Positions 12,655 through 61,900 of a stretch of DNA of 64,000 bases are shown here, piece after piece. Position 1 is the first letter of the stretch; each line of letters opens with the position of its first letter. This stretch comes from Macrostomum lignano (taxonomy: Eukaryota). Made by a program: the position numbers and the translations under genes. Under the pieces are notes generated by a model, which was not told the DNA's origin, searched no databases, and saw only the letters and a list, made by a program, of their open reading frames with translations. The stretch spans positions 1-64,000 of the forward strand of contig NIVC01003933.1 in the NCBI GenBank assembly GCA_002269645.1, written 5' to 3'.

Positions 12655-12782
12655 GTGAGAAGGAGAGAGTAGACAGTAGACAGACAGCAGAGAGAGGACA
12701 ATAAACAGTAGACAGTAGACATTAGACAGTAGACACTGAGAGTAGACAGTTGAGAGTAGACAGTAGACAGTTGAGAGTTGAG

Positions 12783-12816
<34 letters not shown>

Positions 12817-12831
12817 GAGTAGACAGTAGAG

Positions 12832-12879
<48 letters not shown>

Positions 12880-12915
12880 GAGTAGACAGTAGACAGTAGA
12901 GAGTAGACAGTAGAG

Positions 12916-12956
<41 letters not shown>

Positions 12957-12957
12957 G

Positions 12958-13047
<90 letters not shown>

Positions 13048-13083
13048 GAGTAGACAGTAGACAGTAGAGAGTAGACAGTAGAG

Positions 13084-13145
<62 letters not shown>

Positions 13146-13155
13146 GAGTACAGAG
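12655..13155. repeat. 7-bp satellite AGTAGAC/AGTAGAG
   Basis: Direct reading. Confidence 0.93.
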
Positions 13156-13599
13156 TAAATAGTTGAGAGTAATGTCACAAAGCTATTGCATTATCGCAGT
13201 TGGCCAGTGGTAAAAGCCAGTGACAAGCTAAATTCAATCCAGTTTTTATCAGTTCAGATCGTGGCAGTCCTGTTTCCCAAGCTCGCCCCGAAAATGGAAA
13301 GTTGAGTTAGTTTAACAACATTTCTGACTGCCCAACAAAAACCCAAATTCTTCAGTCTGTTCCCGAATTTCGCTTTGAAGGTGAAATGGAAAGTTAATTG
13401 AAAACGAAAAGTTTCCATTTTTTTCGTTTCCCTGCTCCAGTTGAGATGCGGTGAAAAATAAGCGAAATTAGGCTTGCACAGGGACCGAGCCAGGACTTCT
13501 GGGTGAGAAGCCTGGGCGGGATCGGCAACCGGGAAAGTAAAAGCGTCAAAAAGCGGAAATTTCGCCTAGCATTTTGCCTAAATGACACTCATGGTTGTG

Positions 13600-13905
13600 G
13601 AAGTAGAGAGTATAGAGCAGAGAGTAGAGAGCAGAGAGCAGAGAGTAGAGAGTAGAGAACAGAGAGTAGAGAGCAGAGATCAGAGAGTAGAGAGCAGAGA
13701 GTAGAGAGCAGAGAGTAGAGGGCAGAGAGTAGAGAGCAGAGAGTAGAGAGTAGAGAGCAGAGAGTAAAGAGCAGAGTAGAGAGCAGAGAGTAGAGAGTAA
13801 AGAGCAGAGAGTAAAGAGCAGAGTAGAGAGCAGAGAGTAGAGAGTAGAGAGTAGGGAGCAGAGAGTAGATAGTAGAGAGCAGAGAGTAGTGAGCAGAGAG
13901 TAAAG
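13600..13905. repeat. 7-bp satellite AGAGAGY
   Basis: Direct reading. Confidence 0.9.
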
Positions 13906-38600: not shown

Positions 38601-41600
38601 TGAATGGGATTGGGATCGGACTCACCTATCCAACTCCCTCCTAGTCTGGTGCGAGTCAGCAGCGGCAGCAAACGCGTCCCAGTCCATGCCGTGAACGGCC
38701 AATTCTTTAAGCGCTTTGTTTCCAACCGCCGCCTCGTCAATGCCGCTCACAGCCGGCCAATTCTCTGGCTTGCACAGCTTGCTGGCCAGATTGACCGCAT
38801 GCTTGGCGGATTTAGTTGCCACGGTGCTGGCTGCCGACTGCAGAGCCTTGGCTAATAACAGGCCTGGCTCGCCAGTGTGCAGCAGGGCCAGGCGCAGCTG
38901 AGCGGAGGCCTTCACCAGGCGGAGCGCTTCGTAGGCGTGGGAGCGGCAGCCGGCGGTGGCCAAGTCGCAGGCCAGCCAGAGACTGGCGGCTCGCGTGGCC
39001 GAGTCGTCGTTTTTAACAAAATAGCTGCGGTGAGAATTGAGAAACGTATGGAGATGGGAGACGAGATGAGAGTGACAGGGTGAGACTGGGAGTGACGGGG
39101 TGAGACTGGGAGTGACGGGGTGAGACTGAGAGTGAATTGAGAGTGACGGGGTGAGACTGACAGTGACGGGGTGAGACTGGGAGTGACGGGGTGAGACTGA
39201 GAGTGAATTGAGAGTGACGGGGAGAGACTGAGAGTGAATTGAGAGTGACGGGGTGAGACTGAGAGTGAATTGAGAGTGACGGGTGAGATTGAGAGTGCCG
39301 GGTGAGATTGAGAGTGACGGGTGAGATTGAGAGTGCCGGGTGAGATTGAGAGTGACGGGTGAGATTGAGAGTGACGAGTGAGATTGAGAGTGAATTGAGA
39401 GTGAATTCAGAGATTGAGAATGCCGGGTGAGATTGAGAGTGACGGGTGAGATTGAGAGTGAGTGACGGGTGAGATTGAGAGTGACGGGTGAGACTGGGAG
39501 TGACGGGGTGAGACTGGGAGTGACGGGGTGAGACTAGGAGTGACGGGGTGAGACTGGGAGTGACGGGGTGAGACTGAGAGTGACGAGTGAGATTGAGAGT
39601 GAATTGAGAGTGAATTCAGAGATTAAGAGTGCCGGGTGAGATTGAGAGTGACGGGTGAGATTGAGAGTGCCGGGTGAGATTGAGAGTGACGGGTGAGATT
39701 GAGAGTGACGAGTGAGATTGAGAGTGAATTGAGAGTGAATTCAGAGATTGAGAGTGACGGGTGAGATTGAGAGTGAGTGACGGGTGAGATTGAGAGTGAA
39801 TATAGAGTGAATTCAGAGATTGAGAGTTCCGGGTGAGATTGAGAGTGACGAGTGAGATTGAGAGTGAATTGAGAGTGAATTCAGAGATTAAGAGTGCCGG
39901 GTGAGATTGAGAGTGACGGATGAGATTGAGAATGACGGGATGAGATTGAGAGTCCCGGGCGAGATTGAGAGTGACGGGATGAGATTGAGTGATGGGATGA
40001 GATTGTAAGTTATAGGGTGAGATTGAACGACAGGGTGAAATTGAGAGTGCGGGTGAGATTGAGAGTGACATGGTGAGATTAAGAGTGACGGGGTGAGATT
40101 GACTGATGGGATGAGATTGAGAGTGACGGGGTGACATTGAATGACAGGGTGAGATTGAGAGTGACGGGTGAGATTGAGTGACGGAATGCACTCAAAAACA
40201 CAAAAAATAATCACAGCCACTCACCTGAGTTTACCAACAGCATTCAGCTGCGCCTGAGTCAGCGTCTTGCCTCCCTGCAGCAGTCGCTGGTTGAGCCGTT
40301 TCACTACGTTGGGCCTTTCGTTGATAAAGTCGACAACATTTTGCGAATCTTTCAACTGACCGGCCGCCACCTCGCGTTGTAGCTCGCTGGTCTGGCGCAT
40401 GATCTCCGTTAACACCTGGCAGAGTGAAAGTTGATTTGTTAATGTGCGTACTGATATGCACAGCTTCACCATTTGTACAATAAGAGGGTTTTAAGAGGTT
40501 CTGAGGGTTTCAGAGTTTTTTCTGTTCGAAGTCTGATGTACATTGAGGGGTTAAATAAAGTAGCACGATGCCGAAGCGCAGGCAAGTGTATGTACAATAG
40601 GGAGGTTAGATAATGTACATTACAATGGGGGCAGGAAAATATCATCTACATGTACTTTAGGGCAGAAAAATATCAGCTATATGTACATTGGGGGCAGGAG
40701 AATATCAGCTATATGTACCTTAGGGCAGAAAAATATCAGCTATATGTACATTGGGGGCAGGAGAATATCAGATATATGTACATTGGGGGCAGGAAAATAT
40801 CAGCTATATGTACATTGGGGGCAGGAAAATATCAGCTATATGTACATTGGGGGGCAGGAAAATATCAGCTATATGTACATTGGGGGCAGGAAAATATCAG
40901 CTATAGATCCATCAGTGGTCTAGATATTGCTTGTAAATAGCCCGCAAGCATCTTACCGTCTCTTCAAAATTTGTCACCGCAGCGTTGGTGTCCAACAGTC
41001 CGCCATTGAGCAGCACAGCGGGAGCAGAGGCCAGCCCGGATCTGGCTAGGAAAGCCTGTCCAGCAGCCAGTTGATCTTCATAATCCGACGATTTATCCCC
41101 AAGCGCGTCTTTAGAGTCAACATCCGGGTAGAGACCTTTGAAGTACTGATGAGCAAACTCTAAATTGAGACTGTAGCCCTGCTCAAACGTCACTGAATAG
41201 ATGTCGGTGAGATAGCTGACAGCGGACCGTGTGGAGCCTTTGTCGTTTTTAACAAAATTGAACGAGCGAACGAGAGCCCGGCCGACTTCGTCTTTGGGTG
41301 CCCAGACTAGGCCTGACGGGAGAAAATGGGGGGATTTACATGTAGTTGAATTAGACGGAATCAAAATCAACATTGATTGGATTGCTAATGATATAAAGTT
41401 AGACGAGAGTAACATGGCTCACGAGATTAACATTACATAAAGGATGAGATCATGGGATAAAACACAGGATGGGATCATTGGGTCACACACAGGATGGGAT
41501 CATTGGGTCACACATAGGATGGGATCATTGGGTCACACACAGGATGGGATCATTGGGTCACACATAGGATGGGATCATTGGGTCACACACAGGATGGGAT

Positions 41601-43371
41601 CATTGGGTCACACACAGGATGGGATCATTGGGTCACACACAGGATGGGATCATGGAATCACCACACAGGATGGGATCATGGAATCACCACACACAGGATA
41701 GGATCATGGAATCACCTCACACAGGATGGGATCATTAGATCACACACAGGATCGGATTATGGAATCGCCACACACAGGATGGGATCAAGGAATACATAGG
41801 CACCAATACAAGACACTGGCGAGCCCTCACCAATCCGAATGGGCACCGTATGCTGAACGAATGCCTCGCAGTAGCGAATGAGATCGGCGCTCTCTTTGAC
41901 AGCCGGATCGATGAAGACCACCAAGTTGAACAGGTTCCTAGCGATTCTCCGCATGGTGCCAGGGAAAGCCGGCTTCAACAGGTCGTGCACGCTCCTGGGC
42001 CACTGGGCGTACACCTGACTCTGCTCCAAATCGTTCAGATAGACAACTGCCGGATCGCGAAAGTCTAAAGCGAATTTCTCATCGGAAGATGAAGCAGATG
42101 AAGCGGCGAGAGAGCGAAGCACGACACTGGCTACGTGGGAGGCTGGGAGGCCCAGCTGTGTAGCCGCGTCCATCAGGCTGGCTTCCTCTGTGAGAGACTG
42201 GCGTTAGAGTGATGAGGGAGTTGTGTGTAGCTTGATGTTGCTAGGGCTTGTGGGAAAAAGGGAATACATATTGGCTACAGGCTTATAACATATTTGTTGC
42301 TAAGAAGAACTAGAACTATGCCACAAAATATAATTCACCAAAGACACAAATTTACGAAAATAATGCTTGTTGCTTTGAGAGGAATTGAGATAAAAATACA
42401 AGCTAATGGTTGCTATGGGCATACAAGGTCGGAATAGCAGCTTTTAAGGTATCCAAGAGTACAAATATCGGTTGCTATGGGAACCTAAGAGGACAAATAT
42501 CGGTTGCTATGGGAACCTAAGATGACAAATATTGGTTGCTATGGGAATCTAAGAGGACAAATATTGGTTGCTATGAGAACCTAAGAGTACAAATATCGGT
42601 TGCTATGGGAACCTAAGAGGACAAATATCGGTTGCTATGGGAACCTAAGAGGACAAATATCGGTTGCTATGGGAACCTAAGATGACAAATATTAGTTGCT
42701 ATGGGAATCTAAGAGGACAAATATTGGTTGCTATGAGAACCTAAGAGTACAAATATCGGTTGCTATGGGAACCTAAGATGACAAATATCGGTTGCTATGG
42801 GAACCTAAGAGGACAAAAATCGGTTGTTATGGGAATCTAAGAGGACAAATATTGGTTGCTATGAGAACCTAAGAGGACAAATATCGGTTGCTATGAGAAC
42901 CTAAGAGGACAAAAATCGGTTGCTATGGGAATCTAAGAGTACAAATATCGGTTGCTATGAGAACCTAAGAGGACAAAAATCGGTTGCTATGAGAATCTAA
43001 GAGTACAAATATCGGTTGCTATGAGAACCTAAGAGGACAAATATTGGTTGCTATGGGAACCTAAGAGGACAAATATTGGTTGCTATGAGAATCTAAGAGT
43101 ACAAAAATCGGTTGCTTTGGGAACCTAAGAGGACAAATATTGGTTGCTATGAGAATCTAAGAGTACAAATATCGGTTGCTATGGGAACCTAAGAGGACAA
43201 AAATCGGTTGCTATGAGAATCTAAGAGTACAAATATCGGTTGCTATGAGAACCTAAGAGGACAGATATTGGTTGCTATGGGAACCTAAGAGGACAAATAT
43301 CGGTTGCTATGAGAATCTAAGAGTGCAAATACTAGTTGCTATGAGAACACAAGGGGTTGCTATGGGAACCT

Positions 43372-43417
<46 letters not shown>

Positions 43418-44912
43418 GCAGCATAGTGAACACATCGTAGAACTCCAAATCAACAGGCCGGCCATTGACCAATAACAGAGAGGCTCCCTGCGGCAAGCCG
43501 AGCTGCTGCTGAAACAATCGCTGGTTGGCTTCCAGTTGAGCTCTCAGGCTTGGCAGCACAGCAATCTGTGACAGGGCCTTAGCCCGTACAGGATAGTTCT
43601 GACTGAGATCGCGCAGCACGTGAAGACTGTCGTCAACAGTGACGGTAAGTACTCGTTGGGCAGCTTGGTAGCTCAGGTCTTGCAATTGCCAAGCTTTCAA
43701 CGGCGCAATCTCGGTTGAGCTGTCCAACAGGTGCTGCTTGAACTGGTTCAGCTCTTGGCTCAGGTTCGGGTGGAGGGCTCTGGAGTGCATAGGAAACAGC
43801 AGTAGGGATTGCAATGGATAGGGTGTGTTGCAACAGTAGGGATTGCAATGGATAGGGTGTGTTGCAACAGTAGGGATTTCAATGGATAGGGTGTGTTGCA
43901 ACAGTAGGGATTGCAATGGATAGGGTGTGTTGCAACAGTAGGGATTGCAATGGATAGGGTGTGTTGCAACAGTAGGGATTGCAATAGATAGGGTGTGTTG
44001 CAACAGTAGGGATTGCAATGGATAGGGTGTGTTGCAGCAGTAGGGATTGCAATGGATAGGGTGTGTTGCAACAGTAGGGATTGCAATGGATAGGGTGTGT
44101 TGCAGCAGTAGGGATTGCAATGGATAGGGTGGGGTGTTGCAACAAATTGATTCCCTTCTGTGCTCAACCACATTCATTTGTGACTTTTGGTTTACAAAAA
44201 ATTGGCCGAGGGGGGGGGTTGCTCAGTGGGCAGGATTGCCTCAGCGCTAGCTGCTTATGGGACGGATATGCGCTAATTAGGACTGACTGACCTCAGCTTG
44301 GAGAACAGGAAGCCCTGCACTTCGTCCTCTTCGTCATGCCGCCGATGAGAGTCTTCTTTGCTGTCTGGCAGAAATTAATAAAAAGTTATACTCGCATATT
44401 TATTTGAGAATCCATTCAGCAAGTAGTATAGAGAGGTAAATAAGCAGATTATATGATTAATAACCCATATTTCTGATGAAACCACCTGTTAAAAAGTCGC
44501 TTATTATTATTAGAATAACACACGGTTAAACTTCGTATACGTTGCTTACAATACAAAGGTCAGCAATTCTGACACCTTACAATACAGCAGGTAAATCACG
44601 TAAATGGCTGCATACAATTATAAATAATTACAAATTGATTTCACTGAATAGTTGAAAAACCAATACAACACCGGGAACTTACCACTTTGACTAGTCGCTA
44701 AAATTATTTTGCAGAGTAAAGAAAGACTGACATTATGTCTCTATCCATCACACTATCTGTCAATTAATCAGTGAACTTAATAAATCTGTCTGTCTTAGAG
44801 TCTTAGTGTCCTAGTGCCTGTCTGTCTTGTCCGTTTGTCCGTCTGCTGTCTGTCTGCCTACCTGCCTACCTGCCTGTCTGTCTGTCTGTCTGTCTGCCTG
44901 CCTGTCTTTCTT

Positions 44913-44945
<33 letters not shown>

Positions 44946-44962
44946 CTCTCTGTCTGCCTGCC

Positions 44963-45007
<45 letters not shown>

Positions 45008-45010
45008 GCC

Positions 45011-45060
<50 letters not shown>

Positions 45061-45068
45061 CCTGTCTA

Positions 45069-45103
<35 letters not shown>

Positions 45104-45120
45104 CTGTCTGTCTATCTGTA

Positions 45121-45189
<69 letters not shown>

Positions 45190-45204
45190 GTCTGTATGTC
45201 TACC

Positions 45205-45287
<83 letters not shown>

Positions 45288-47441
45288 TTATCTGTTTGTC
45301 TGTCTGTCTGTTGTCTATTGATGTCTATCAATCTATCAATCAATCTATGTCTATCTACGATCTATATCTAATTTTCATGTCTCTGTATCCATTCTTACAC
45401 ATAAATATCGCCAATTATCAAAACGGCAGACTCTTAGTAGTATGTTTAGAGCATCGCATCCTAAATGAGGTGTATGAAGTGAATATAAAAAGTTAGTAAA
45501 AAGACGCAACTCACCCTCAACTTTGCTATCATCCATAGCCTTATACTCTGTACTTTTGATAGCCAATTCCACACCATAGCCCGACAGCCTCGTGCGCTGC
45601 TGTCGCCGCTGCAGCGAATTCAACTCAGCTGGCGGAGCGTGACGAAAAGCGTATCTCAGTTTGCCGGCTCTGGCCAGCGTTGTCATGGCAACGTGCCAAG
45701 CTGGAAAACCGCCGGAAGCCAATCTAGCATAGAGCAAAACCGTTAGCGGCAGTTGCTGCTCATCAACTCCAGCTGATTCCAGCCTGACTTTATCGGTCCG
45801 GTACAGCTGCAGAGGTGCGCTGGCATTGGCCGCGGCTAACTTAGCATCCAGCTGATCCGCGGTACAGGCGATGCCACCGCCTGGTAGGACGGCGAAACCG
45901 CCGCTACTGTCGAGGCTTTTCAAGCATCTATCAGCGTCATTCAAGCCCAGCTGAGCGTTCATCTCCAGGGTTGGCGAGGCAGCTCGCAGTGACAGCCACA
46001 GGCGGAGCAGGTCGGACCGGCTGCCGGGCGCGAGTCGGCTTGACTCGGACAGGGCCAGCTGGTACTCTGCGCTGTCCGTCACTGCGGGTCGGTTTTGCCG
46101 TTGGGTGGCTGGGTCAGCTCCGGTCAGTTGCAGTATGATAGTGAGTCAGTGGGTCAGTGAGTCAGTGGGTCAGTTGGTCAGTGAGTCAGTTGGTCAGTGG
46201 GTCAGTAGGTCAGTGAGTCAGTGGGTCAGTGGGTCAGTAGGTCAGTGAGTCAGTAGGTCAGTGGGTCAGTGGGTCAGTTGGTCAGTAGGTCAGTGGGTCA
46301 GTGAGTCAGTAGGTCAGTGGGTCAGTGAGTCAGTAGGTCAGTTGGTCAGTAGGTCAGTGGGTCAGTGGGTCAGTGGGGCAGTGGGTCAGTGATTCAGTGA
46401 GTCAGTAGGTCAGTGGGTCAGTGAGTAAGTAGGTCAGTAGGTCAGTAGGTCAGGTCAGTGGGTCAGTGGGTCAGTGGGGCAGTGGGTCAGTGATTCAGTG
46501 AGTCAGTAGGTCAGTGGGTCAGTGAGTAAGTAGGTCAGTAGGTCAGTAGGTCAGTGGGTCAGTGGGTCAGTGGGGCAGTGGGTCAGTGATTCAGTGGGTC
46601 AGTGAGTAAGTAGGTCAGTAGGTCAGTGGGGCAGTGGGTCAGTGAGTCAGTAGGTCAGTTGGTCAGTGAGTCAGTGGGGCAGTGGGTCAGTGATTCAGTG
46701 AGTCAGTGGGTCAGTGAGTCAGTGAGTCAGTAGGTCAGTGGGTCAGTGAGTTAGTAGGTCAGTAGGTCAGTGGGGCAGTGGGTCAGTGAGTCAGTGGGTC
46801 AGTGAGTCAGTGAGTCAGTAGGTCAGTGGGTCAGTGAGTTAGTAGGTCAGTAGGTCAGTGGGGCAGTGGGTCAGTGATTCAGTGAGTCAGTGGGTCAGTG
46901 AGTCAGTGAGTCAGTAGGTCAGTGGGTCAGTGAGTTAGTAGGTCAGTAGGTCAGTGGGGCAGTGGGTCAGTGAGTCAGTGGGTCAGTGAGTCAGTGAGTC
47001 AGTAGGTCAGTGGGTCAGTGAGTTAGTAGGTCAGTAGGTCAGTGGGGCAGTGGGTCAGTGAGTCAGTCAGTCAAACTTTACTCACTGCTACTCAAGTCAT
47101 TCCGCTGTGCCAGATTGTCCAAATATTGCCAGAACAGTTCCGAATTTTGCTGGTGAAGGAACTCACTACAAATGATTAGGGAATGCTCATCATATTGTTA
47201 TTGTTTTAAATTTGAAATTACAATAACTAAGAAAATTAATGATGAATCAAGTAAACTCTTGCCTAGCCTCAGCCAGCAGCGAGGTGGACTGCCACTTGGC
47301 GAACATATTAACGGACACGAACTTGGATCGGGCCAGCACGCATGGCGGAGCGATGCTAATCAGTGCCAGCAGGAGGAGCGGCAGCGAGCAGCCAGCGCCA
47401 AACAAGCTAACAAACTGGGCCGCTCTCATTTGCTGCAACAT
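32662..47441 (-). CDS. UGGT: UDP-glucose:glycoprotein glucosyltransferase (UGGT, GT24), ~1571 aa, 14 coding exons
   Basis: Exons (minus): 47441-47263, 47165-47086, 46081-45515, 44364-44292, 43779-43416, 42197-41831, 41312-40957, 40415-40225, 39024-38626, 37871-37281, 36620-36021, 35076-34978, 33998-33428, 32940-32662 = 4716 nt, all phases consistent. Signal peptide; [20 protein letters not shown]; [11 protein letters not shown]; [11 protein letters not shown]; [23 protein letters not shown]; [11 protein letters not shown] (DxD); [10 protein letters not shown]; [10 protein letters not shown]; C-terminal HTEL ER-retrieval signal. Confidence 0.97.
32965..33405. repeat. Degenerate AAAATCCCGAATTCCAAAAACCATA repeat (UGGT intron 13)
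   Basis: Direct reading. Confidence 0.85.
34385..34842. mobile_element. Non-autonomous DNA transposon (MITE), copy 1, in UGGT intron 12
   Basis: ~35-bp TIRs CACAGATACTAGAATAACTAGATGGGCCACTCAG / CTGAGTGGCCCATCTAGTTATTTTAGTATCTGTG, subterminal TTCAGTTCAGTAG / CTACTGAACTGAA; homologous to 57437-57989. Confidence 0.75.
35620..35960. repeat. ~29-bp GGCGGCATCATCAAAGAATCTGTGAGGGT array (UGGT intron 11)
   Basis: Direct reading. Confidence 0.88.
36800..37165. repeat. Degenerate ~30-bp GGCGGCATCATCAAAGGATTCAGAAAATT array (UGGT intron 10)
   Basis: Direct reading; same core as 35620-35960. Confidence 0.82.
38020..38610. repeat. 34-35-bp TGTGAATGGGATCACGGGATTTGAATCCTACTACC array (UGGT intron 9)
   Basis: Direct reading. 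Confidence 0.92.
39060..40185. repeat. ~19-bp GAGATTGAGAGTGACGGGT array (UGGT intron 8)
   Basis: Direct reading. Confidence 0.92.
40615..40905. repeat. 32-bp GGGGGCAGGAAAATATCAGCTATATGTACATT array (UGGT intron 7)
   Basis: Direct reading. Confidence 0.9.
41445..41790. repeat. 25-bp GGTCACACACAGGATGGGATCATTG array (UGGT intron 6)
   Basis: Direct reading. Confidence 0.9.
42465..43415. repeat. 32-bp TGCTATGGGAACCTAAGAGGACAAATATCGGT array plus (CA)n abutting the donor (UGGT intron 5)
   Basis: Direct reading. Confidence 0.93.
43795..44140. repeat. 34-bp TGCAATGGATAGGGTGTGTTGCAACAGTAGGGAT array (UGGT intron 4)
   Basis: Direct reading. Confidence 0.93.
44815..45350. repeat. (CTGT)n microsatellite (UGGT intron 3)
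   Basis: Direct reading. Confidence 0.93.
46140..47072. repeat. 8-bp GTCAGTGG/GTCAGTAG/GTCAGTGA satellite (UGGT intron 2)
   Basis: Direct reading. Confidence 0.93.
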
Positions 47442-49224: not shown

Positions 49225-51197
49225 TTAACTATCTTGGCCCAGATAAGCTGGGTAATCCAGAGAGTTTTGCGAAGCAATTTTCTCAGCCAAAGTTTCATTG
49301 TTAGCCGACACGATGAGCTTGCTCTGCGGAGTAAGCGGCTCGCAGATTCTCAATACAATCGATCGCGGCTTGCAACTCAGCTTGCGAAACAATGCCATCG
49401 ACCTCTCCGAATAGTCTGCCGAGGAAAGCATCAGAATGTACCGGTTCTCAATGTCGTGCTCCTGCACTTGAGCAACTACGGACGACAGAATACCGACTAC
49501 AAAGTTAATGAATAGAATCGGCACAAATAGCACGTAGAATATGTGGGTCACGTTCAGGTCGATGCGATCGTTCTTCGGTACAAATATCGTCGTGTCAACA
49601 ATGTTCAAAGAAACTAGAAATGTCTCGTAGAAGGCGGCTAGAAACTGAGGAATTGTATCCGGCCTGCTAGTAGTAGAATTAGTTGAGCTAGAGAAGATAA
49701 AGTTCGACTGAAACATTCGCGCGAAGATGGCCATAAGTACCAAATAGAGGACTATAAAGAAGGTGAACGCTGTTAAACTGTTGTAGAAACTGCTCATTAA
49801 AGTAGTCAGTGGCCGCAACAGGCGAAGATAGCAGACAAGAAGACAGGCACTAGACAGCAACAGAATTATGTTGCATAGACCAGTGACAGTGTAAATAAAG
49901 TGACCGAATAGTTGGCAAGCGCGTTCAGCATCCAAGTAGATCCAAAACAGACCGACAGTGGCAGGAAACGAGACTAAGGTAGGCAAGTTCCACGTCAACA
50001 TGTCATAGTAGTACTTCCTTGGCCATTTAGGATAATTTACTTGGTTCCTGAAATATTTATCAAAAAATGGCAAAAACGTCTTAACAAACTGACAATTGCA
50101 AACCAACCGAATGGCACAATAGTGAAATGGCATTACAAACGTACTCACCTTATATATTCCTTGCGAACAACTCCATACAACATAGAAAACGTTCCAAGCG
50201 AAGTGTACGCAAGCCAAACCGAGAGAACTACAACTGTTCCAATAGGAATATCGGCATTCACGCCGGCGCATCTAAACTTGATGTAATCGTTGAGAATGCT
50301 GCCAGTGAACACAACAGTAAACACAGTGAGCAGAACACCGACGAAAAGAATGGTATAGAGATACATCTTATTCGACTCAAAAAGCAGGTCAACCCACTGT
50401 TTCCAGATGAAGTTGTGCCTAAAAATTCCGATTTTCTTGAGCTCCGGCAGGGTTGATTCGCCGTACAAATCAAGCAGGATGCAGATTGGGCTGGTGAAAT
50501 AACACGGATTTTCACCAACGAGTTCAGACACATCCATAGTGATGTGCTCAGTAATGCCGATAGCCTCCGACTTTACAAGACAGTTGGGTGAGAAATAGTA
50601 AATGACGTACTCAACGTAGTTTGCAAGACCGAGGTACACACCCCAGCTCAATGGACTCATGCCGGCAACACTTCGAGAATTAAGCATAACAGTATGCTGT
50701 TTCTGAGTGAAAAGCACACGATGGAACAAGCACACCAAGTCAAAAATTTCTGTCTTCGAACCCGTTTCCAATCGGCGCTTGGATGAAAAACTAAGTGCTC
50801 CAAACAAATGATGATAAGCGTTGAAGCCGTGCTCAACAATGCTGCTGAAGTCAACGCCAGACTCATTCATGTAAATCAGACACTTCTGTGCGTTATAAAA
50901 CATCGCGATAAAGAAAGGGTTGGTAGGAAACGGATGCACATTATTGCACATAGCAACAGTGCTAGCGAACTGCGGACTGCATTCAAGCCAAACACTACCT
51001 GTGTCTCTGCTTTGCAGGAACTGCTTCCAGTTGATGTGCCTTGAAAAAACTTTTAAGTCTTCAACGTTGTCCTCGGCGAGACACTTAATGAAAGCCAACC
51101 AGTCCTCGTTGGTTGGTAAAAAGTCCAAGATGTTGTAGGGACATTCGATCATTTCCGGTGTATCCAACTTGGGCAAGATAGAATTTTTGTGCTTCAT
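49225..51197 (-). CDS. Divergent TRPV-like channel, copy A (~623 aa, 2 exons)
   Basis: Exons 51197-50149 and 50047-49225 (101-nt GT-AG phase-2 intron; in-frame TGA 9 nt upstream of the ATG). Ankyrin-like AGMSPLSWGVYLG; TRPV linker/pre-S1 HITMDVSEL..IWKQW; six hydrophobic segments; pore FYETFLVSLNIVD; S6 LFINFVVGILSS; TRP-helix-like ENRYILML..SER. Confidence 0.8.
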
Positions 51198-53368
51198 TTC
51201 GAATCAAGTTTTGTTTTGCTGTAGTAAAATATTCCGCGTACAGTTGAAAACAACGTTCTGCGTTCCGATATTGACTTTTAGGCGCCAGTTTATAGGGCAA
51301 GCTAATCAGATTATATCATTGGCTATGCTTGGCTCTCCAGTAATCACATGACAGTGATTGGCTGTGTTACTCACTTCAGCAAGTTTTTCGTTTGAAATCA
51401 ACACTAGCTGTTAGTGTAAAATCAAGTGGCCAGATCAGAATACCAGACAGTACTTGGGGGCCCTTGATAAATTCACCTGGCTTTGTGAAACAATAAAACT
51501 GTCTATAGAATCTGCTATTGTATTATAATCCGAAGGCTAGGCAAACAGCGGCCGGGAAAAGTGGACCTGAGTGGGCAATCAATAATCAACTATGCAAATA
51601 TTTACCTTCCGAGCCAGTTGGGAAACCGAGAGCTCACTCTGAGCTAATCCGCTTAACTAGCACAGCATCCGCTGTGTGCCAGCCAGAATGACAAAGAAAA
51701 ATCATGCGACGAAGTTTATTTCTGTTGGCATGGCAACGGATTGACTGGCGTAGCAAAATGCGAATCAAACTGGATTTACAAGCTATCCAAAGCCGTGCAT
51801 TGATTTAATTATTGATAAGGTGAACGGAAGTGCTTGACTAGGACTATGAATAACTAGGCTCCCTGGGCTGGAAACGTTAATATTAATTAGACTAGAAGTT
51901 CTTCCATCAAAAACTTACTGGTTAGAAATATGTGCAAAAAAATCCCTAAGATAAAAGGATTGAGCCAGTCTATACAGAAAACTGTGCTCTGGGGGAAATA
52001 TAGAGGGCCCATCCCAAGACCATGCAAACTGCGTTTGGAGAGAGACACGCAGTTTGCAATGCACAATGGACAGCTAGCAAATGAGACAGCTAGGAAAGCT
52101 ATTTAGATAAAAGCTGTTTTCGTCTCCCCAAAGTCATACAACAAAAGCAACGTAAAATAACGTCTCCAACCTAGCAACCTACTAGAACTTTTTTTTCATG
52201 AAATACATGAAAAACAGGTACTTAATAAAAAATAAACCGAAGCCATAACTCTGAGCTGCATCTTTTCTTAATGCTTGAATATTATTATAGCCAGTTTTAA
52301 TTATCACTATCTAGTTCTTATGAAACTTAATGGACAGCTACATGTAATCTAAAGTAGCAGCTGTTGAAAGAGTTCACACTGCCCGAAATTCTGACTGTTC
52401 CACTTGTGACCTGGTGATCAAATATTGATAATACGCATCTGACTGATTGATCAAACACTCTTGTTTTAAAATATCAAGTGATTGACACTCGGTAAAGCAC
52501 TGAGCAGTATGCCACAAAAAGAATTCATTGATTGGTAGCAGGCATTAATGTCAAATATTTGCGACATAGGAGCGTGGCCAAGGGATCGCTGCAATTCTAA
52601 GCAATATGGGCGGGGGTTTAGACCCGATTGAGACGGCATAGAACTGCATCGATTAATTACACTATAAGTAGCTACACTCACAATTTAGCTACTGAGTGTA
52701 CTTCGAGAAAATTCACAATCCATTTATCCAGAAAAGAATTGTACAGCTTTCGATAGCTTTGTTTTATCAATGTTTATTTTTAAAAGAGAATTATTTTAGA
52801 ACACGACAAATAGCATTTGGTAATATTTCGTAGTTAAATGTAAACGCGAGTTTAATAACAGACTATAAGTTTCTATCACATTTTGCAATTGCATTTCCGT
52901 CATGCATGCTTGCTTTATAGATTTGAATCAGAATAATTTGTCCGATTGCAAAACTGCAAAACGGTACATTGCAAAAATTCTGTCCGATTACGCAAAAGTG
53001 AAACTGTAGAATCAAGGATAGGAACTCGGTTATCCTTGATAATCGAGGATAACCGATTATTCAACTTCCTCTCGGTTATTCAACTTCACTATCCAGATTA
53101 GAAATACTATTCGGCCATATCCGGATATTCGATCGGGTAAGGACATATTAGAATTCAGATAACAAACATCCGACTAAATTTTCGTCTAAATTTAGCGCAA
53201 ACGCAACGGTTGGTTTTTAAAGCCCTTTCTGAGCACACACAATATTGAACAAAGAAATTCTATACTATTACTATTGCATCACGTAATAGATTTACAGAGC
53301 ACAGAATGCCACTATGTTTAAAAAAAACTGAGTGAATTTTCAATTGTATCAATTTGCGACGAAATATG

Positions 53369-55312
53369 TCACAGAGGTCGCTGCGGAATCATTGACTCGA
53401 GCGTATTACGACAAAATGCAACAAGCTTGCTTTCCGGACTAAGCGGCTGACAAATCGACAATTTAACTGTTTGATGGCCCAATAAGCGTCGAATCAATCC
53501 ATTAATAAAATAGAATGTGCGCTCGGAAAATTCGGACGCCCCCAGCATTAAAATGTAGCGATTTTCAACGTCGTGTTCGATAACTTGAGAAACAACAGAC
53601 GACAGAATTCCGACAACGAAGTTTATGAATAGAATCGGCACAAACAGTACGTAGAACAGGTGTGTCACATTGAGATCAATCCGATCGTCTGCTGGCCTGA
53701 ATATTGTCGTATCGACGATGTTCAACGATACTAAAAACGTTTGATAGAAAGCTGCCAAAAAATCTGGAAACGTGTCGGATCGGCTGGTCGTAGTATTGCT
53801 GGCGCTTGAGAAAATAAAGTTGGACTGAAACATTCGCGCAAAAATCACCATCAAACAGAGGTACATAAAGACAAACACGCTGAAAGTACCTAGACTGTTG
53901 TAGAAGCTGCTCATCAAGGTAGTAAGGGAGGATACTAGGCGAAGATAGCACACGATTAGGCTGACACAAGTCATCAACAAGAGAATGTGGCACAAGCTAC
54001 TAACAGTGTAAATAAAATCTTTAAATATCGCGCAGCTCCGACCAGTGTCAAGGTAAATCCAAAGCAAGAACACTGTAATTAGCAAGGCAACAGTGCTAGG
54101 AAATAGCCAGCCAACTAGGTCTCTGTAGTTTCGGCGTGGTATTTTCGGGTATCCGACTTTGTGCCTGCAATAAAAACCAGGGAAAATTCGATAAACAGAA
54201 TACTGAATATAAGAATCGATTGTATAGCTACGCATGGACAGTGATGGTTACCTATAGTATTCCTTTCGAGCAACTCCAAATGCAGCAATAAAAACGGATG
54301 AACCCGAAGTGATAAGCCAGGTGAGTAAGACACAAACCGTTCCAGTTGGATACACAGAAGGAGCATTTTCGCACTTGCTTTTAATATAGTCGTTGCCACT
54401 GCTACCGGTAAAGACTACAGTGACTACAGTCAGCAAAATGGCGAGCAGCAAGTAAAAAAATATGACGACTCGATTGCGCTTAAACATTAAATCCACCCAG
54501 TGCTTCCACAGATAACCTTTCCGAAATATGCCGAGCCTTTTTAACTCGGGCAGAGTAGACTCGCCGTAAATGTCCAGCATGACGGAAAGTGGACTAGTAA
54601 AGAAGCTCGGATCCTCACCAGTAACATCTGACACATCCATAGTGATGTGCTCGTTGATACCCAGAGACTCGGAATGCACTGTACAATTTGGCGAAAAGTA
54701 GTAAATCACGTATTCTACCTGATCTGGCAGACCAATGTACACGCCCCAAGAGAGCGGTGTCATGCCATTTTGGCAAACTGATTTAATCATCGAACTCTGC
54801 TGATCGCGGGTGAACAAAGTGCAATGAAATAAAGTGATCAGCTCGCTATACTTGGCCAACGGAGCGTCGGGGCATCGACGGATCGACATGAAGTGTATGG
54901 CGCTAAATAAGACATGATAAGCGGACACGCCGCGCTCTCTTAGCTTGGAGAAGTCGACGCCGGACTCCATCATAAAAATCAGGCATTTTTGCGCGTTGAA
55001 GAACATAGCGACAAAGAATGGATTAGTGGGATACGGATGCTTTCCGGAGATTAATCCGCCTGGCAGAGTGAACTCATTTGAACAGTTGAGCCATACATTC
55101 TTAACGTCGCAACTTTGTAGGAAACGATTCCAGTCAACGTACTTAGAAAATATCTGCAAGTCTTCGACATTGTCATCGGCTAGACATTTGAGAAAGGACA
55201 ACCAATACGATTCTGTTGGTAAAAATTGTACTATGTCGAACTCACATTCGACTGTCTCGTTTAAGCCTGATTCAGACGACCCTACTGTAGCCGACGTAGT
55301 CAGTTCAAGCAT
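53369..55312 (-). CDS. Divergent TRPV-like channel, copy B (~618 aa, 2 exons), tandem paralog of copy A
   Basis: Exons 55312-54252 and 54164-53369 (87-nt GT-AG phase-2 intron at the same protein position as in copy A: EYYR|HKVGYPK vs EYIR|NQVNYPK). NGMTPLSWGVYIG; pore FYQTFLVSLNIVD; identical S6. Confidence 0.8.
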
Positions 55313-58070: not shown

Positions 58071-58715
58071 TTAAGCAGCCAAGAAAAACTCGTAGCCCTT
58101 AGGTATGAAAGGCGGCGGTCTTGGCTGTGGCGGCAGCCGAGTGAAGCTGTAACCGCTAGGTCGATACTGCAGCTGGTGCTGCCGCAGGCCGCCAGTGAAC
58201 ATACCAATTGACGGCGTCAGGCCCAACTGTACTCCGTACTTAGACAAAACTGCATCAGCTAGCATGGCAACCGTGAATCTGGAGCAATTACAGGCTAGCA
58301 CAGCCTCTAATAGGCACAGATGCAGGGCCTGGCCAGGTCGCAGGGCCAACAGGCCAGTCAAGGTGATGCTGAAGCTGAGCAAGAATGACAGCCAGAAGAA
58401 CAGATCGAAGCCAACAGTGGATCGCCAGGCTAGCAGGGGCAGCAGCATCGCACGGCAGCAGCCAGCAACTAAAACTAATTTGGCAGTCTTGTGCAGGCTC
58501 AGGCTGCCTCGGTTAACGAACTCGTTGGATAAGATGGCTAAGATCTGGGGGCGGGGCAGGGGCGGAATTACTTTGCAAAAAGGCTTTGATATATACAAGC
58601 TGTTTATAAGCTGGGACACTGCGATCAACAGCAAAAACAGAAACCAAGGCCAAAAAATTTACACGAAGGAAGTTGGAAGCTAATTTATTTGATTGATTAG
58701 TATTGTGCCAACGAG

Positions 58716-58765
<50 letters not shown>

Positions 58766-59476
58766 AATAGACAGAAAGACAGACACACAGACACAGAAAG
58801 ACAGACAGACAGACAGACAGACAGACATAAACTGAGACAGACAGAAAGACACGAACTGAGACAGACAGACAGACACTAAGACAGACAGACAGACAGAGAG
58901 ACAGACAGACAGACAGAAAGACAGACAGACAGACAGACAGACAGAAAGACAGACACACAGACAGACAGACAGACAGACAGACACAGACAGACAGACAGAC
59001 ACAGACAGACAGACATAAACTGAGACAGACAGACAGACACTAAGACAGACAGACAGACAGACAGAGAGACAGACAGACAGACAGAAAGACAGACAGACAG
59101 ACAGACAGACAGAAAGACAGACACACAGACAGACAGACAGACAGACAGACACAGACAGACAGACAGACACAGACAGACAGACATAAACTGAGACAGACAG
59201 ACAGACACTAAGACAGACAGACAGACAGACAGAGAGACAGACAGACAGACAGAAAGACAGACAGACAGACAGACAGACAGAAAGACAGACACACAGACAG
59301 ACAGACAGACAGACAGAAAGACAGACACACAGACAGACAGACAGACAGACACAGACAGACAGACAGACACAGACAGACAGACATAAACTGAGACAGACAG
59401 ACAGACACTAAGACAGACAGACAGACAGAGAGACAGACAGACAGACAGAAAGACAGACAGACAGAAAGACAGACAC

Positions 59477-59523
<47 letters not shown>

Positions 59524-60174
59524 CAGACAGACAGACATAAACTGAGACAGACAGAAAGACACGAACTGAGACAGACAGACAGACAGACAGAGAGACAGAC
59601 AGACAGACAGAAAGACAGACACACAGACAGACAGACAGAAAGACAGACACAGACAGACAGACAGACACAGACACTACCACAAATCTAAAACGATACGCAC
59701 ACAGATACAAAGCAGACACATCTCACACAAGACAACACAGACTAATAGGCTCACCATAGAGGCAGTCTGCAAAGTGGACACCAATAGCTTAGCATAGAAT
59801 TCCATCTCTTTAGCAGCCGAGAACACGGCAGCGGACAGATCCGAGTCCAAGTCTCTGGCCTCCAGCCACAAAGCGTAGGCCTCGCAGATGACTAACAGCA
59901 GCAGGCCGCGCCACACGGCCCCATGCGCCAGTCGGTGATTATGCAACAGATGGCGCATAGCAGCCAGTCTATGCAAAAGTATATCTAAGGCTAGCAACAG
60001 GCGATCGCATTCAATATATCGATCAGCTGGTTGACCGCATTTGTTACACTTGGCCAATTGCACTACATCTGCGCTGTACTTGGTGTAGAGACTGGAAACA
60101 GATGAGCCGCATTCTACACAAATGTAATCATTATAGTTGGCTTCTTTTGGTTTAGACTCGTTTGAAGACTGCAT
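58071..60174 (-). CDS. ARV1: ARV1 family ER membrane protein (~297 aa, 2 exons)
   Basis: Exon 1 60174-59755 has the Arv1 zinc motif [48 protein letters not shown]. Exon 2 best acceptor 58544 to TAA at 58071 ([20 protein letters not shown]). Phase-0 GT-AG intron; upstream in-frame alternative acceptors exist. Confidence 0.88.
58715..59670. repeat. (GACA)n-based microsatellite with variant blocks (ARV1 intron)
   Basis: Direct reading. Confidence 0.93.
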
Positions 60175-60889: not shown

Positions 60890-61900
60890 AGAAAACATCC
60901 CAGGACAGCAAGCAACCCCCCAGATAGCAAGCACCACCAGATAGCAAGCATCTCCAGATAGCAAGCACCCCCCGATAGCAGGCACCCCAGATAGCAAGCA
61001 TCCACCTAATAGCAAGCACCCCAAGATAGCAAGCATCCACCTAATAGCAAGCACCCTTAGAAAGCAAGCATCCTCAGATAGCAAGCATCCACCTAATAGC
61101 AGGCACCCTTAGATAGCAAGCATCCCCAGATAGCAAGCACCCCCCGATAGCAGGCACCCCAGATAGCAAGCATCCACCTAATAGCAAGCACCCCAAGATA
61201 GCAAGCATCCACCTAATAGCAAGCACCCTTAGAAAGCAAGCATCCACCTAATAGCAGGCACCCTTAGATAGCAAGCATCCCCAGATAGCAAGCATCTCCA
61301 GATAGCAAGCACCCCAGATAGCAAGCATCCACCTAATAGCAAGCACCCCAAGATAGCAAGCATCCACCTAATGGCAAGCACCCTTAGAAAGCAAGCACCC
61401 CCAGATAGCAAGCATCTCCAGATAGCAAGCATCTCCAGATAGCAAGCACCCCAGATAGCAAGCATCCACCTAATAGCAAGCACCCCCAGATAGCTAGAAC
61501 CCCCAAGACAGCAAGCATCCCCCCCAGATAGCACACATATCCAGATAGCAAGCACTCCAAGATAGCAGGCACCCCAGATAGCAAGCATCCACCTAATAGC
61601 AAGCACCCTTAGATAGCAAGCATCCCCAGATTGCAAGCACCCCCAGATAGCAAGCACCCCCAGATAGCACGCATCTCCAGATAGCAAGCACTCCAAGATA
61701 GTAGGCACCCTAGATAGCAAGCATCCACCTAAAAGCAAGCACCCCCAGATAGCTAGAACCCCCAAGATAGCAAGCATCCCCCCAGATAGCAAGCACCCCC
61801 AGATAGCAAGCACCCCCAGATAGCAAGCATCCCCAGATAGCAAGCACCCCCAGATAGCAAGCATCCAATTGATAGCAATTATCTATCTTAAATAGCAAGC
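60890..61900. repeat. ~16-bp AGATAGCAAGCACCCC array upstream of ARV1
   Basis: Direct reading. Confidence 0.92.

What the first reader, a model, noticed from the sequence alone, without database searches (positions are those of the whole stretch)
49225..55312. Tandem pair of atypical TRPV-like channels: short ankyrin domain, Gly-free 'LNIVD' filter, degenerate TRP box
Seen: ~620-aa proteins with only ~2-3 recognisable ankyrin-like repeats; copy A has an in-frame stop just upstream of its ATG, so it is probably complete. Pore FY(E/Q)TFLVSLNIVDTT; S6 INFVVGIL; Y where the TRP-box W is expected (ENRYILML). Established: TRPVs have about six ankyrins; TRPV1-4 have a GMGD filter and invertebrate TRPVs keep a filter Gly, whereas Ca2+-selective TRPV5/6 have LFSTFELFLTIID. 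Inference: a divergent TRPV/TRPVL-type subfamily that may have converged on a TRPV5/6-like Asp filter, possibly working as an A/B heteromer like Nanchung/Inactive or OSM-9/OCR-2.
Basis: partly seen in the sequence, partly recalled or inferred. Interest (0 to 1): 0.72.

Follow-up and report, generated by a model that had tools for sequence, protein, structure and literature searches.

The report
Divergent short-ankyrin TRPV-like channel gene pair
Two neighbouring flatworm (Macrostomum lignano) genes encode intact, very divergent relatives of TRPV ion channels that lack the first ankyrin repeats and carry a TRPV5/6-style aspartate in the pore; they belong to a wider unnamed family, which is of moderate interest to people who study channel evolution.

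Summary
Window 49225-55312 (minus strand) carries two paralogous two-exon genes, A (623 aa) and B (618 aa), 58% identical, with one intron at the same position and all the quoted motifs. The window is Macrostomum lignano DNA.

Neither protein hits any Pfam model or PDB sequence on its own. An exhaustive profile search found about 40 relatives of 555-666 aa. Profiles of that family hit only TRPV channels among the 60 best PDB matches listed. TRPV6 and TRPV5 come first (E 6e-37 and 8e-34), ahead of TRPV2, TRPV3, Nanchung and TRPV4.

AlphaFold models (pTM 0.72 and 0.80) give a TRPV-type subunit and Foldseek agrees.

- **Ankyrin domain:** the family lacks the equivalent of TRPV5 residues 1-110 (ANK1-2).
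- **Filter:** the D of LNIVD aligns with the TRPV5 filter Asp. No member has a Gly after it.
- **TRP helix:** no member has the TRP-box Trp.

These traits are family-wide, so convergence in this pair is not needed to explain them. The filter Asp varies: it is Asn in the 99%-identical copy of A in the GenBank assembly and in 9 of 43 relatives.

Both genes are intact in both copies of the locus, with dN/dS about 0.2. An A/B heteromer has no support. Placement relative to TRPVL and TRPVA-D could not be tested.

The parts
50149..51197 (-). Gene A exon 1 (codons 1-349 plus 2 nt of codon 350): N-terminus, ankyrin-like repeats, beta hairpin, pre-S1, S1, S2
   Evidence: stop 2 codons upstream of the ATG
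50048..50148 (-). Gene A intron, 101 nt, GT..AG, phase 2
   Evidence: identical intron in the homeologous locus L007
49225..50047 (-). Gene A exon 2 (last base of codon 350, then residues 351-623 and the stop): S3-S6, pore, TRP helix, C-terminal strand
54252..55312 (-). Gene B exon 1
54165..54251 (-). Gene B intron, 87 nt, GT..AG, phase 2, same codon position as in A
53369..54164 (-). Gene B exon 2 including the stop codon
50583..50942 (-). A residues 86-205: three ankyrin-type repeats equivalent to TRPV5 ANK4-6
   Evidence: profile alignments to TRPV5/6 and DARPins; helix pairs 94-111, 127-162 and 182-201 in the model; alignment with TRPV5
51012..51107 (-). A residues 31-62: N-terminal helices that include a degenerate ANK3-like helix pair (31-53)
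   Evidence: model helices with pLDDT 84-91; aligns with TRPV5 ANK3
50532..50576 (-). A residues 208-222: linker beta hairpin (IGITEHITMDVSEL, equivalent to YGPLTSTLYDLTEID in TRPV5)
49825..50369 (-). A residues 277-424: S1-S4 helices (the range spans the intron)
   Evidence: hydropathy; model
49588..49644 (-). A residues 485-503: pore helix and LNIVD filter; the D501 codon GAC is at 49594-49596
49459..49563 (-). A residues 512-546: S6 with the conserved Asn531 (INFVVGIL)
49399..49455 (-). A residues 548-566: TRP helix without the TRP-box Trp (ENRYILML)
49336..49356 (-). A residues 581-587: C-terminal beta strand (IVLRICE), equivalent to the TRPV strand that joins the linker hairpin
53705..53761 (-). 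B residues 489-507: pore helix and LNIVD filter; the D505 codon GAT is at 53711-53713
53576..53680 (-). B residues 516-550: S6

Best explanation
A and B are functional, tandemly duplicated paralogs in Macrostomum lignano. They belong to an unnamed, very divergent family of TRPV-type cation-channel subunits of about 600 aa.

Each subunit has the following parts, in order:
- a short cytosolic ankyrin domain (equivalents of TRPV ANK4-6 plus a degenerate ANK3-like helix pair, with ANK1-2 absent);
- the TRPV linker beta hairpin and a pre-S1 helix;
- S1-S4, then S5, pore helix, filter and S6;
- a TRP helix that lacks the canonical Trp;
- a C-terminal beta strand.

By analogy with solved TRPVs (inference), four subunits form one pore. 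The Asp of L-N-I-V-D sits where TRPV5/6 place the single Asp ring that binds Ca2+, so the Asp forms are predicted to favour or be blocked by divalent cations. The Asn variants would be non-selective.

Between A and B the pore is far more conserved (85-91%) than S1-S4 and the termini (34-52%). The family also expands in tandem arrays. This fits diversification of the stimulus-sensing parts around a fixed pore, as in sensory receptor families (inference). The gating stimulus is unknown.
For: **Gene structure and intactness**
- Searches give the two-exon structure.
- The second genomic copy (L007, GenBank assembly GCA_002269645.1) has both genes intact with the same introns. dN/dS is 0.21 for A (11 synonymous, 9 non-synonymous codon differences) and 0.19 for B (9 and 6).

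**Organism**
- P0001, named as an M. lignano protein, is 99% identical to A.

**Family**
- 39 hits in 1.84 billion representative proteins, most of them 555-666 aa and aligned end to end.
- 7 of 25 members hit Pfam Ion_trans.
- A neighbour-joining tree puts the M. lignano clade with group 2 in 200 of 200 bootstraps.

**TRPV relationship**
- Profile A3 against the PDB: TRPV5 3e-27.
- Profile A5: TRPV6 6e-37 in one stretch (profile 67-555 to TRPV6 159-613), TRPV5 8e-34, TRPV2 2e-28, TRPV3 and Nanchung about 1e-27. All 60 listed hits are TRPVs.
- The narrow profile A4, which excludes group 3, still hits only TRPV5 (3e-5) and TRPV6 among channels.

**Fold**
- AF2 pTM is 0.72 for A and 0.80 for B. 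Both models show six TM helices, a pore helix, a TRP helix, a beta hairpin and a C-terminal strand.
- Foldseek gives TM-scores of 0.50-0.58 to TRPV1/2/3/5/6 and Nan/Iav, against 0.31-0.40 to TRPA1.

**Key residues**
- D501 aligns with the TRPV5 filter Asp.
- N531 aligns with the S6 Asn and is present in 38 of 38 ungapped members.
- Sequons N473 and N515 lie in the predicted extracellular pore loops and are conserved in B.

**Complete N-terminus**
- Stops lie 1-22 codons upstream of the ATG in A, B and seven relatives, five of which are single uninterrupted ORFs.
Against: - No experimental data exist. No expression data or paper mentions these genes.
- A and B alone hit nothing in Pfam or the PDB, so the assignment rests on profiles and predicted structures. 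Sequence identity to TRPVs is only 11-14%.
- The filter Asp is Asn in the A' copy and in 9 of 43 relatives. That weakens any general claim of Ca2+ selectivity.
- Loss of the TRP-box Trp and of ANK1-2 could mean altered or lost gating.
- dN/dS rests on only 15-20 differing codons per gene.
- Tetramer formation was not modelled.
- An upstream exon spliced in downstream of the ATG cannot be ruled out from genomic DNA alone.
Confidence: 0.8

Rival explanations
1. The family is a fast-evolving offshoot of the TRPV5/6-type lineage (the 'TRPVC/D' clade that is expanded in lophotrochozoans). On this view the Asp filter is inherited rather than convergent, and the genes are extreme members of a described clade.
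For: TRPV6 and TRPV5 lead every profile search by about 15-28 bits over other TRPVs, and the match covers almost the whole protein. The filter Asp and pore helix align column for column. Lophotrochozoan TRPVC/D genes exist and are duplicated in a lineage-specific way (PMC9664204; six in abalone, PMC12980990).
Against: A score ranking is not a phylogeny, and the pore motif itself may drive the lead. Foldseek does not separate TRPV5/6 from TRPV1-3 or Nan/Iav. Described TRPVC/D genes are annotated as TRPV5/6-like and have six ankyrin repeats, whereas these proteins are invisible to Pfam. No reference invertebrate TRPV sequences could be obtained.
Confidence: 0.35
2. The family is, or includes, TRPVL. 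That is the already named sister family of TRPV, reported from cnidarians, annelids and a mollusc.
For: TRPVL is described as a TRPV sister group with a similar structure that most bilaterians have lost (PMC8749608; PMC12980990). The family here is about equally far from all TRPV types in fold. It is patchily distributed: no hit in the exhaustive search that was traced carries an organism name other than M. lignano.
Against: TRPVL is defined only by phylogeny, and no TRPVL sequence was available for comparison. TRPVL has not been reported from flatworms in the papers read. The clear TRPV5/6 lead in HMM scores is not what a sister of all TRPVs would be expected to show.
Confidence: 0.2
3. One reading: a TRPV/TRPVL-type subfamily converged independently on a TRPV5/6-like Asp filter and works as an obligate A/B heteromer like Nanchung/Inactive or OSM-9/OCR-2.
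For: The two genes are adjacent, on the same strand and both intact. A UniRef gene model (P0002) fuses B and A, which could reflect read-through transcription. The pore and S6 are nearly identical, so mixed tetramers are sterically plausible.
Against: The filter motif is shared by the whole family, so no convergence within this pair is needed. Nan/Iav and OSM-9/OCR-2 pair two ancient clades, TRPVA and TRPVB (PMC9664204). A and B are lineage-specific duplicates that group together in 200 of 200 bootstraps. M. lignano has further paralogs (P0003, P0004), and relatives occur in arrays of three. No co-expression or interaction data exist.
Confidence: 0.12
4. The genes are decaying, non-channel or mis-modelled: pseudogenes, or fragments of longer TRPV genes whose ankyrin exons lie upstream.
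For: The genes have lost the TRP-box Trp and ANK1-2. The filter shows a D/N difference between copies. B is not annotated in the GenBank assembly. The UniRef model P0002 skips transmembrane segments.
Against: There are no frameshifts or internal stops in A, B, A' or B', and dN/dS is about 0.2. The pore is the best conserved part. The GenBank model of A has the same start. Seven relatives have the same length and N-terminal position, with upstream stops, and five of them are single uninterrupted ORFs. tblastn finds no further family exons in the window.
Confidence: 0.05

Closest known systems
TRPV5 / TRPV6 (vertebrate epithelial Ca2+ channels, 'TRPVD' type)
   Same: These are the best sequence-profile matches, covering ANK4 through the TRP helix in one stretch. 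The subunit fold is the same. A single Asp sits at the aligned filter position after a hydrophobic pore helix (…FLVSLNIVD against …FELFLTVID). The S6 Asn, the linker beta hairpin and the C-terminal strand are all present.
   Different: - Identity is only 11-14%.
- ANK1-2 and the N-terminal 110 residues are absent.
- Asn replaces Thr three residues before the Asp.
- No Gly-Pro follows the Asp.
- The TRP-box Trp (W583 in TRPV5) is absent.
- The C-terminus is short and lacks the long tail of TRPV5.
- The filter Asp is replaced by Asn in some copies.
- Ion selectivity is untested.
Lophotrochozoan TRPVC/D-like genes (annelids, molluscs; Morini et al. 2022, PMC9664204; abalone, PMC12980990)
   Same: They come from a spiralian lineage, show TRPV5/6-like affinity and have undergone lineage-specific duplication.
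   Different: Standard annotation recognises those genes as TRPV5/6-like. The proteins here give no Pfam hit and have a truncated ankyrin domain. The relationship was not tested by phylogeny.
TRPVL (vanilloid-like family; cnidarians, annelids, abalone)
   Same: It is a TRPV-related Group 1 TRP with ankyrin repeats, a patchy distribution and no known function.
   Different: It is defined only by tree position. No TRPVL sequence was available, it has not been reported in flatworms, and its pore and TRP-box features are unknown to me.
Nanchung/Inactive and OSM-9/OCR-2 heteromeric TRPVs
   Same: The subunit fold is similar (Foldseek top hits), and two related subunit genes occur in one genome.
   Different: Those pairs combine two ancient clades (TRPVA and TRPVB) found across animals and have longer N-termini. 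A and B are recent tandem paralogs within a larger expansion.
[quoted passage not shown]
   Same: They are lineage-specific TRPV-like genes that do not fall into the named subfamilies.
   Different: Any relationship is unknown.

Membership tests
TRP superfamily, Group 1 (6TM tetrameric cation channels) | Six transmembrane helices with a re-entrant pore helix between S5 and S6 | tested here: met
   Hydropathy. AF2 models with S1-S6 and a pore helix. More than 200 Foldseek hits at E<=0.001, and all 50 listed for each model are TRPV or TRPA1 channels. Relatives hit Pfam Ion_trans. A and B themselves do not.
TRPV | N-terminal ankyrin repeat domain of six repeats | tested here: not met
   Only equivalents of ANK4-6 plus a degenerate ANK3-like helix pair are present. 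Nothing aligns with TRPV5 residues 1-110. The short N-terminus is family-wide, with upstream stops.
TRPV | Linker domain beta hairpin plus a C-terminal beta strand after the TRP helix | tested here: met
   Predicted strands at 208-213, 216-222 and 581-587 in A, and at 211-217, 220-226 and 588-594 in B. They align with the TRPV5 YGPLTSTLYDLTEID and RWFLRVE segments. This rests on prediction only.
TRPV | TRP helix carrying the TRP-box Trp (IWKLQR / LWRAQ) | tested here: not met
   The helix is predicted (548-566 in A). The Trp column holds Arg in A, B and A', and no member of the 43 has Trp there.
TRPV | Conserved S6 Asn (LLNxLIAxM) | tested here: met
   N531 of A aligns with the TRPV5 S6 Asn and is present in 38 of 38 ungapped members.
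TRPV | Closest similarity to TRPVs rather than to other TRP families | tested here: met
   All 60 listed PDB hits for profiles A3 and A5 are TRPVs. Foldseek TM-scores are 0.50-0.58 for TRPVs and 0.31-0.40 for TRPA1.
TRPV | Placement inside the TRPV clade in a phylogeny with outgroups | not testable with these tools
   Only one reference TRPV (Lynx TRPV5, P0069) could be obtained.
TRPV5/6 type | Single Asp ring in the filter (T-I-I-D-G-P) | tested here: inconclusive
   The Asp aligns. The flanking residues differ (N-I-V-D-T-T). The Asp is Asn in A' and in 9 of 43 relatives.
TRPV5/6 type | High Ca2+ selectivity, inward rectification, constitutive activity | not testable with these tools
   Needs electrophysiology.
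TRPVL | Grouping with cnidarian and annelid TRPVL as sister to TRPV (the family is defined only by phylogeny) | not testable with these tools
   No TRPVL sequence was obtainable. The papers read describe only its tree position.
Obligate heteromeric TRPV pair (Nan/Iav type) | The two subunits come from the distinct ancient clades TRPVA and TRPVB | tested here: not met
   A and B are 58% identical and group together in 200 of 200 bootstraps. At least two more paralogs exist in the species.
Obligate heteromeric TRPV pair (Nan/Iav type) | Co-expression and mutual dependence for function | not testable with these tools
   No expression data or literature was found.

The most novel reading that the evidence does not exclude
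The two genes represent a previously unrecognised, old TRPV-related subfamily, distinct from TRPVA, B, C, D and from TRPVL. It is defined by a short ankyrin domain, a Y-x-T/S-F-x3-L-N-x-V-D/N pore motif with no Gly, and a Trp-less TRP helix. It is expanded as tandem, often intronless arrays in Macrostomum and in other, still unidentified eukaryotes known only from metagenome and transcriptome assemblies. It may serve as a sensory receptor repertoire with switchable (Asp or Asn) ion selectivity.
Probability: 0.35. Interest if true: 0.6.

Novelty: new variant of a known kind. Interest (0 to 1): 0.5.

Why it matters
TRPV channels are central sensory and Ca2+-transport channels, and their early evolution and subfamily boundaries (TRPVA-D, TRPVL, 'unclassified' mollusc genes) are still being drawn.

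A family that keeps the TRPV fold but drops ANK1-2 and the TRP-box Trp is a natural test of two questions. The first is which parts are needed for assembly and gating. The second is whether the single-Asp filter of TRPV5/6 is older than vertebrates.

The natural Asp/Asn difference between two nearly identical copies is a ready-made selectivity experiment.

The family also shows that standard domain searches miss real channels. A and B have no Pfam hit, and B is unannotated in the GenBank assembly.

The practical impact is modest. Nothing here bears on a known physiological function.

Tried and rejected
- **Direct searches:** Pfam on the four ORF pieces and on the spliced proteins gave no relevant hit. 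phmmer of A against the PDB gave nothing. The three-sequence profile gave only ankyrin hints at E about 1.
- **Word-index homology search:** A found only M. lignano proteins. Searching with group-3 member P0022 gave only unnamed metagenome proteins plus one vertebrate TRPV5.
- **Naming the source organisms of the relatives:** cluster look-up gave no names. Contig look-ups gave only sample and assembly accessions. A literature search for those accessions found nothing.
- **Literature on the gene and protein identifiers:** nothing found.
- **Reference sequences for a tree:** no supplement with TRPVL or unclassified abalone sequences is held. The Himmel and Cox review is not held. A formal phylogeny against the named subfamilies therefore could not be made.
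- **Bootstrapping:** the first attempt with Biopython timed out. It was redone with numpy.
- **Bacterial promoter/terminator scan:** uninformative for a eukaryotic gene.
- **Alternative genetic code in relatives:** considered because of internal TGA codons. Rejected as a gene-caller artefact, because nearly all the TGAs lie at or beyond the natural C-terminus.

Full report
**1. What is in the sequence**

The region holds two genes on the minus strand. Each appears as two long ORFs that overlap in different frames. Reading the junctions shows one canonical GT..AG intron in each gene, at the same codon and in phase 2.

- Gene A: 51197..50149 joined to 50047..49225, 623 aa, intron 101 nt.
- Gene B: 55312..54252 joined to 54164..53369, 618 aa, intron 87 nt.

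The spliced proteins are 58% identical over 590 residues. A stop lies 2 codons upstream of A's ATG and 4 codons upstream of B's.

At the DNA level only the pore-S6 coding part is still recognisably repeated: 74-77% identity with a spacing of 4117 nt. dS between A and B is saturated. The duplication is therefore old.

**2. Organism and second copy**

The closest database protein is 'hypothetical protein BOX15_Mlig003410g1 [Macrostomum lignano]', 99% identical to A. Its locus in GenBank assembly GCA_002269645.1 (L007) is collinear with the window at 96-98% identity. The gene order is Arv1, B, A, UGGT.

Both A' and B' are intact there with the same introns.
- A and A' differ at 11 synonymous and 9 non-synonymous codons (dN/dS 0.21).
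- B and B' differ at 9 and 6 (dN/dS 0.19).

The numbers are small, but this is the pattern of genes under purifying selection. One of the nine A/A' changes is D501N, at the proposed filter residue. B' was not annotated in that assembly.

**3. How divergent the proteins are**

Neither the ORF pieces nor the spliced proteins hit any Pfam-A model, even at E<=10. A alone hits no PDB sequence. For contrast, a single 192-aa exon of an unrelated TRPM-like gene elsewhere in the window hits solved TRPMs at 4e-15. UniRef calls the M. lignano proteins 'Ion_trans domain-containing', but the current Pfam did not reproduce that call.

**4. The family**

A three-sequence profile was searched exhaustively against 1.84 billion representative proteins. 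It found 39 proteins at E<=0.001, and most full-length ones are 555-666 aa and align end to end. Three groups appear.

- Group 1 is M. lignano: A, B, P0003 and P0004, so the species has at least four paralogs.
- Group 2 (P0007-P0013, P0032) shares LNIVD and FNYIIGVVS. It joins group 1 in 200 of 200 neighbour-joining bootstraps.
- Group 3 (P0018 and others, extended) carries LNMVD and LLNFLIALMS.

The members of groups 2 and 3 that were traced all come from unnamed metagenome, genome or transcriptome assemblies. I could not name the organisms.

The group-3 genes examined are called as single ORFs without introns (two contain TGA codons) on eukaryotic contigs of up to 5.8 Mb, and some are clustered. 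One 20-kb stretch holds three paralogs. Another locus has a second paralog 8.6 kb away.

**5. Relation to known channels**

Seven of 25 family members hit Pfam Ion_trans. Family profiles searched against all PDB sequences list only TRPV channels among the best 60.

| Profile | Result |
|---|---|
| 19 sequences (A3) | TRPV5 3e-27, TRPV6 4e-26, TRPV2 5e-22, Nanchung 2e-21 |
| 35 sequences (A5) | TRPV6 6e-37 (130.7 bits; profile 67-555 to TRPV6 159-613 in one stretch), TRPV5 8e-34, TRPV2 2e-28, TRPV3 and Nanchung about 1e-27, TRPV4 7e-26 |
| Groups 1 and 2 only (A4) | Only TRPV5 (3e-5) and TRPV6 (0.009) among channels, plus designed ankyrin proteins on one repeat |

**6. Fold**

AlphaFold2 models have mean pLDDT 74.9 and pTM 0.72 for A (13-sequence alignment), and pLDDT 81.8 and pTM 0.80 for B (35 sequences).

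Both models show, in order: helix pairs in the N-terminal third, a beta hairpin, linker helices, six long TM helices, a pore helix between S5 and S6, a helix after S6 in the TRP-helix position, and a late beta strand.

Foldseek against the PDB returns TRPV6, Nanchung/Inactive, TRPV1, TRPV2, TRPV3 and TRPV5 with query TM-scores of 0.50-0.58. TRPA1 entries score 0.31-0.40. The hairpin plus C-terminal strand is the arrangement seen in solved TRPVs (established knowledge). It also aligns with the corresponding TRPV5 segments.

**7. Residue-level anatomy from the alignment with TRPV5**

- **N-terminus:** nothing corresponds to TRPV5 residues 1-110 (ANK1-2).
- **Ankyrin repeats:** residues 32-53 of A align with ANK3, and residues 86-205 with ANK4-6.
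- **Pore:** …FYETFLVSLNIVDTT… aligns with …LFSTFELFLTVIDGP…, so D501 of A falls on the TRPV5 filter Asp.
- **Filter column across 43 family members:** Asp in 29, Asn in 9, Glu in 2.
- **Residue three before the filter:** Asn in 40 of 43.
- **Residue after the filter:** never Gly.
- **S6:** the Asn is conserved in 38 of 38 ungapped members.
- **TRP-box Trp column:** never Trp. In A the MAFFT column holds R553, and N552 is the alternative when counting from the start of the helix.
- **Other conserved positions:** W268 (pre-S1) and H129 (ANK5) are invariant. H518 (start of S6) is conserved in all 38 ungapped members.
- **Glycosylation:** sequons N473 and N515 lie in loops predicted to be extracellular and are conserved in B.

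Between A and B the pore helix and filter are 91% identical and S6 is 85%. S1-S4 are 45-52% and the termini 34-42%.

**8. Completeness of the N-terminus**

Several lines argue against missing ankyrin exons.
- The GenBank model of A uses the same start.
- tblastn finds no other family exons in the window.
- Seven relatives, five of them single uninterrupted ORFs, start at the equivalent position with in-frame stops 1-22 codons upstream.

This makes missing exons unlikely. Only cDNA can exclude them.

**9. Interpretation**

*Shown:*
- Two intact, conserved paralogs.
- Membership of a wider family.
- TRPV-type sequence and predicted fold.
- A truncated ankyrin domain.
- The aligned filter Asp.
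- Absence of the TRP-box Trp and of a filter Gly.

*Inferred:*
- Tetrameric cation channels.
- An Asp ring giving divalent-cation preference, as in TRPV5/6. There the single Asp is known to determine Ca2+ permeation and Mg2+ block (established knowledge).
- Asn variants being non-selective.
- Sensory-type diversification, because the sensing parts diverge while the pore is kept.

*Not supported:*
- Convergence as the origin of the Asp filter. The motif is family-wide and the family as a whole is most similar to TRPV5/6.
- An obligate A/B heteromer. These are lineage-specific duplicates within a larger expansion, unlike the ancient TRPVA/TRPVB pairing described in PMC9664204.

**10. Comparison with the literature**

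M. lignano is reported to have a canonical TRPV, and parasitic flatworms none (PMC5196486). TRPVs are divided into A, B and C/D, with C/D genes duplicated in annelids and molluscs (PMC9664204). TRPVL is a sister family known from cnidarians, annelids and abalone. Abalone also has two unclassified genes near TRPV/TRPVL (PMC8749608; PMC12980990).

None of the papers read describes a short-ankyrin, Trp-less, LNxVD family or these genes.

I could not obtain reference sequences to place the family on a tree. Whether it is an extreme TRPVC/D offshoot, TRPVL or a separate branch therefore remains open.

**11. Verdict**

This is a real feature, correctly read in its essentials by the first stage. It is best described as a new, divergent variant of the TRPV kind. 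Interest is moderate.

Noticed in passing
window 20103-24542 (minus strand): Several exons of a TRPM-like channel gene. ORF 20106-20681 hits Pfam Ion_trans and solved TRPM2-like, TRPM4, TRPM5 and TRPM8 structures at up to 4e-15. ORF 21474-22481 also hits Ion_trans weakly. The gene is unrelated to the A/B family.
   Followed up: partly
window 33401-46082 (minus strand): A multi-exon UDP-glucose:glycoprotein glucosyltransferase (UGGT) gene with Glyco_transf_24, UDP-g_GGTase and Thioredoxin_12 domains. The same gene follows A' in the GenBank locus L007.
   Followed up: partly
window 59674-60174 (minus strand): An Arv1-family gene exon (Pfam Arv1, 4e-30), upstream of B. The gene order Arv1, B, A, UGGT is conserved in L007.
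   Followed up: partly
window 49594-49596; L007 position of A' codon 501: The filter codon of A is GAC (Asp) in the window but encodes Asn in the 99%-identical copy of the GenBank assembly (P0001, P0002, L007). B keeps Asp in both copies.
   Followed up: yes
L007 6005-7948 (GCA_002269645.1, NIVC01001778.1): The counterpart of gene B is intact in the GenBank assembly, but the locus table lists no gene there.
   Followed up: yes
UniRef A0A1I8H738 (P0002), corresponding to window 49225-55312: A 732-aa gene model fuses B and A and skips transmembrane segments in both. For A it uses the normal donor (50148) and an in-frame AG inside codon R478 as acceptor. This could be a prediction artefact, or read-through with alternative splicing.
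   Followed up: partly
window 2100-2850, 5180-7800, 11150-15550, 17500-18330, 26270-28880, 43330-45370, 58700-59620, 61230-61860: Many long microsatellite or minisatellite tracts give spurious ORFs of 130-750 aa in several frames (for example DRQT/SLSL, CLSV and VQDCVQRCRIVSKGAGLCPK repeats).
   Followed up: no
L009 10001-11809 and L010 10001-12001 (ENA ERZ26052378): The metagenome gene calls for these eukaryotic contigs read TGA as Trp. The predicted proteins therefore run past the likely true stop. P0043 also has one internal TGA at codon 270 and may be a pseudogene.
   Followed up: partly
L002 1402-19633 (ENA ERZ26222911, 382-kb contig); L009 10001-21809: Distant relatives of A/B occur as clusters of ORFs called without introns (627, 584 and 610 aa within 20 kb; a second paralog 8.6 kb away on the opposite strand in L009). 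LTR-retrotransposon ORFs lie near other family loci (L006, L010). The source organism is unknown.
   Followed up: partly
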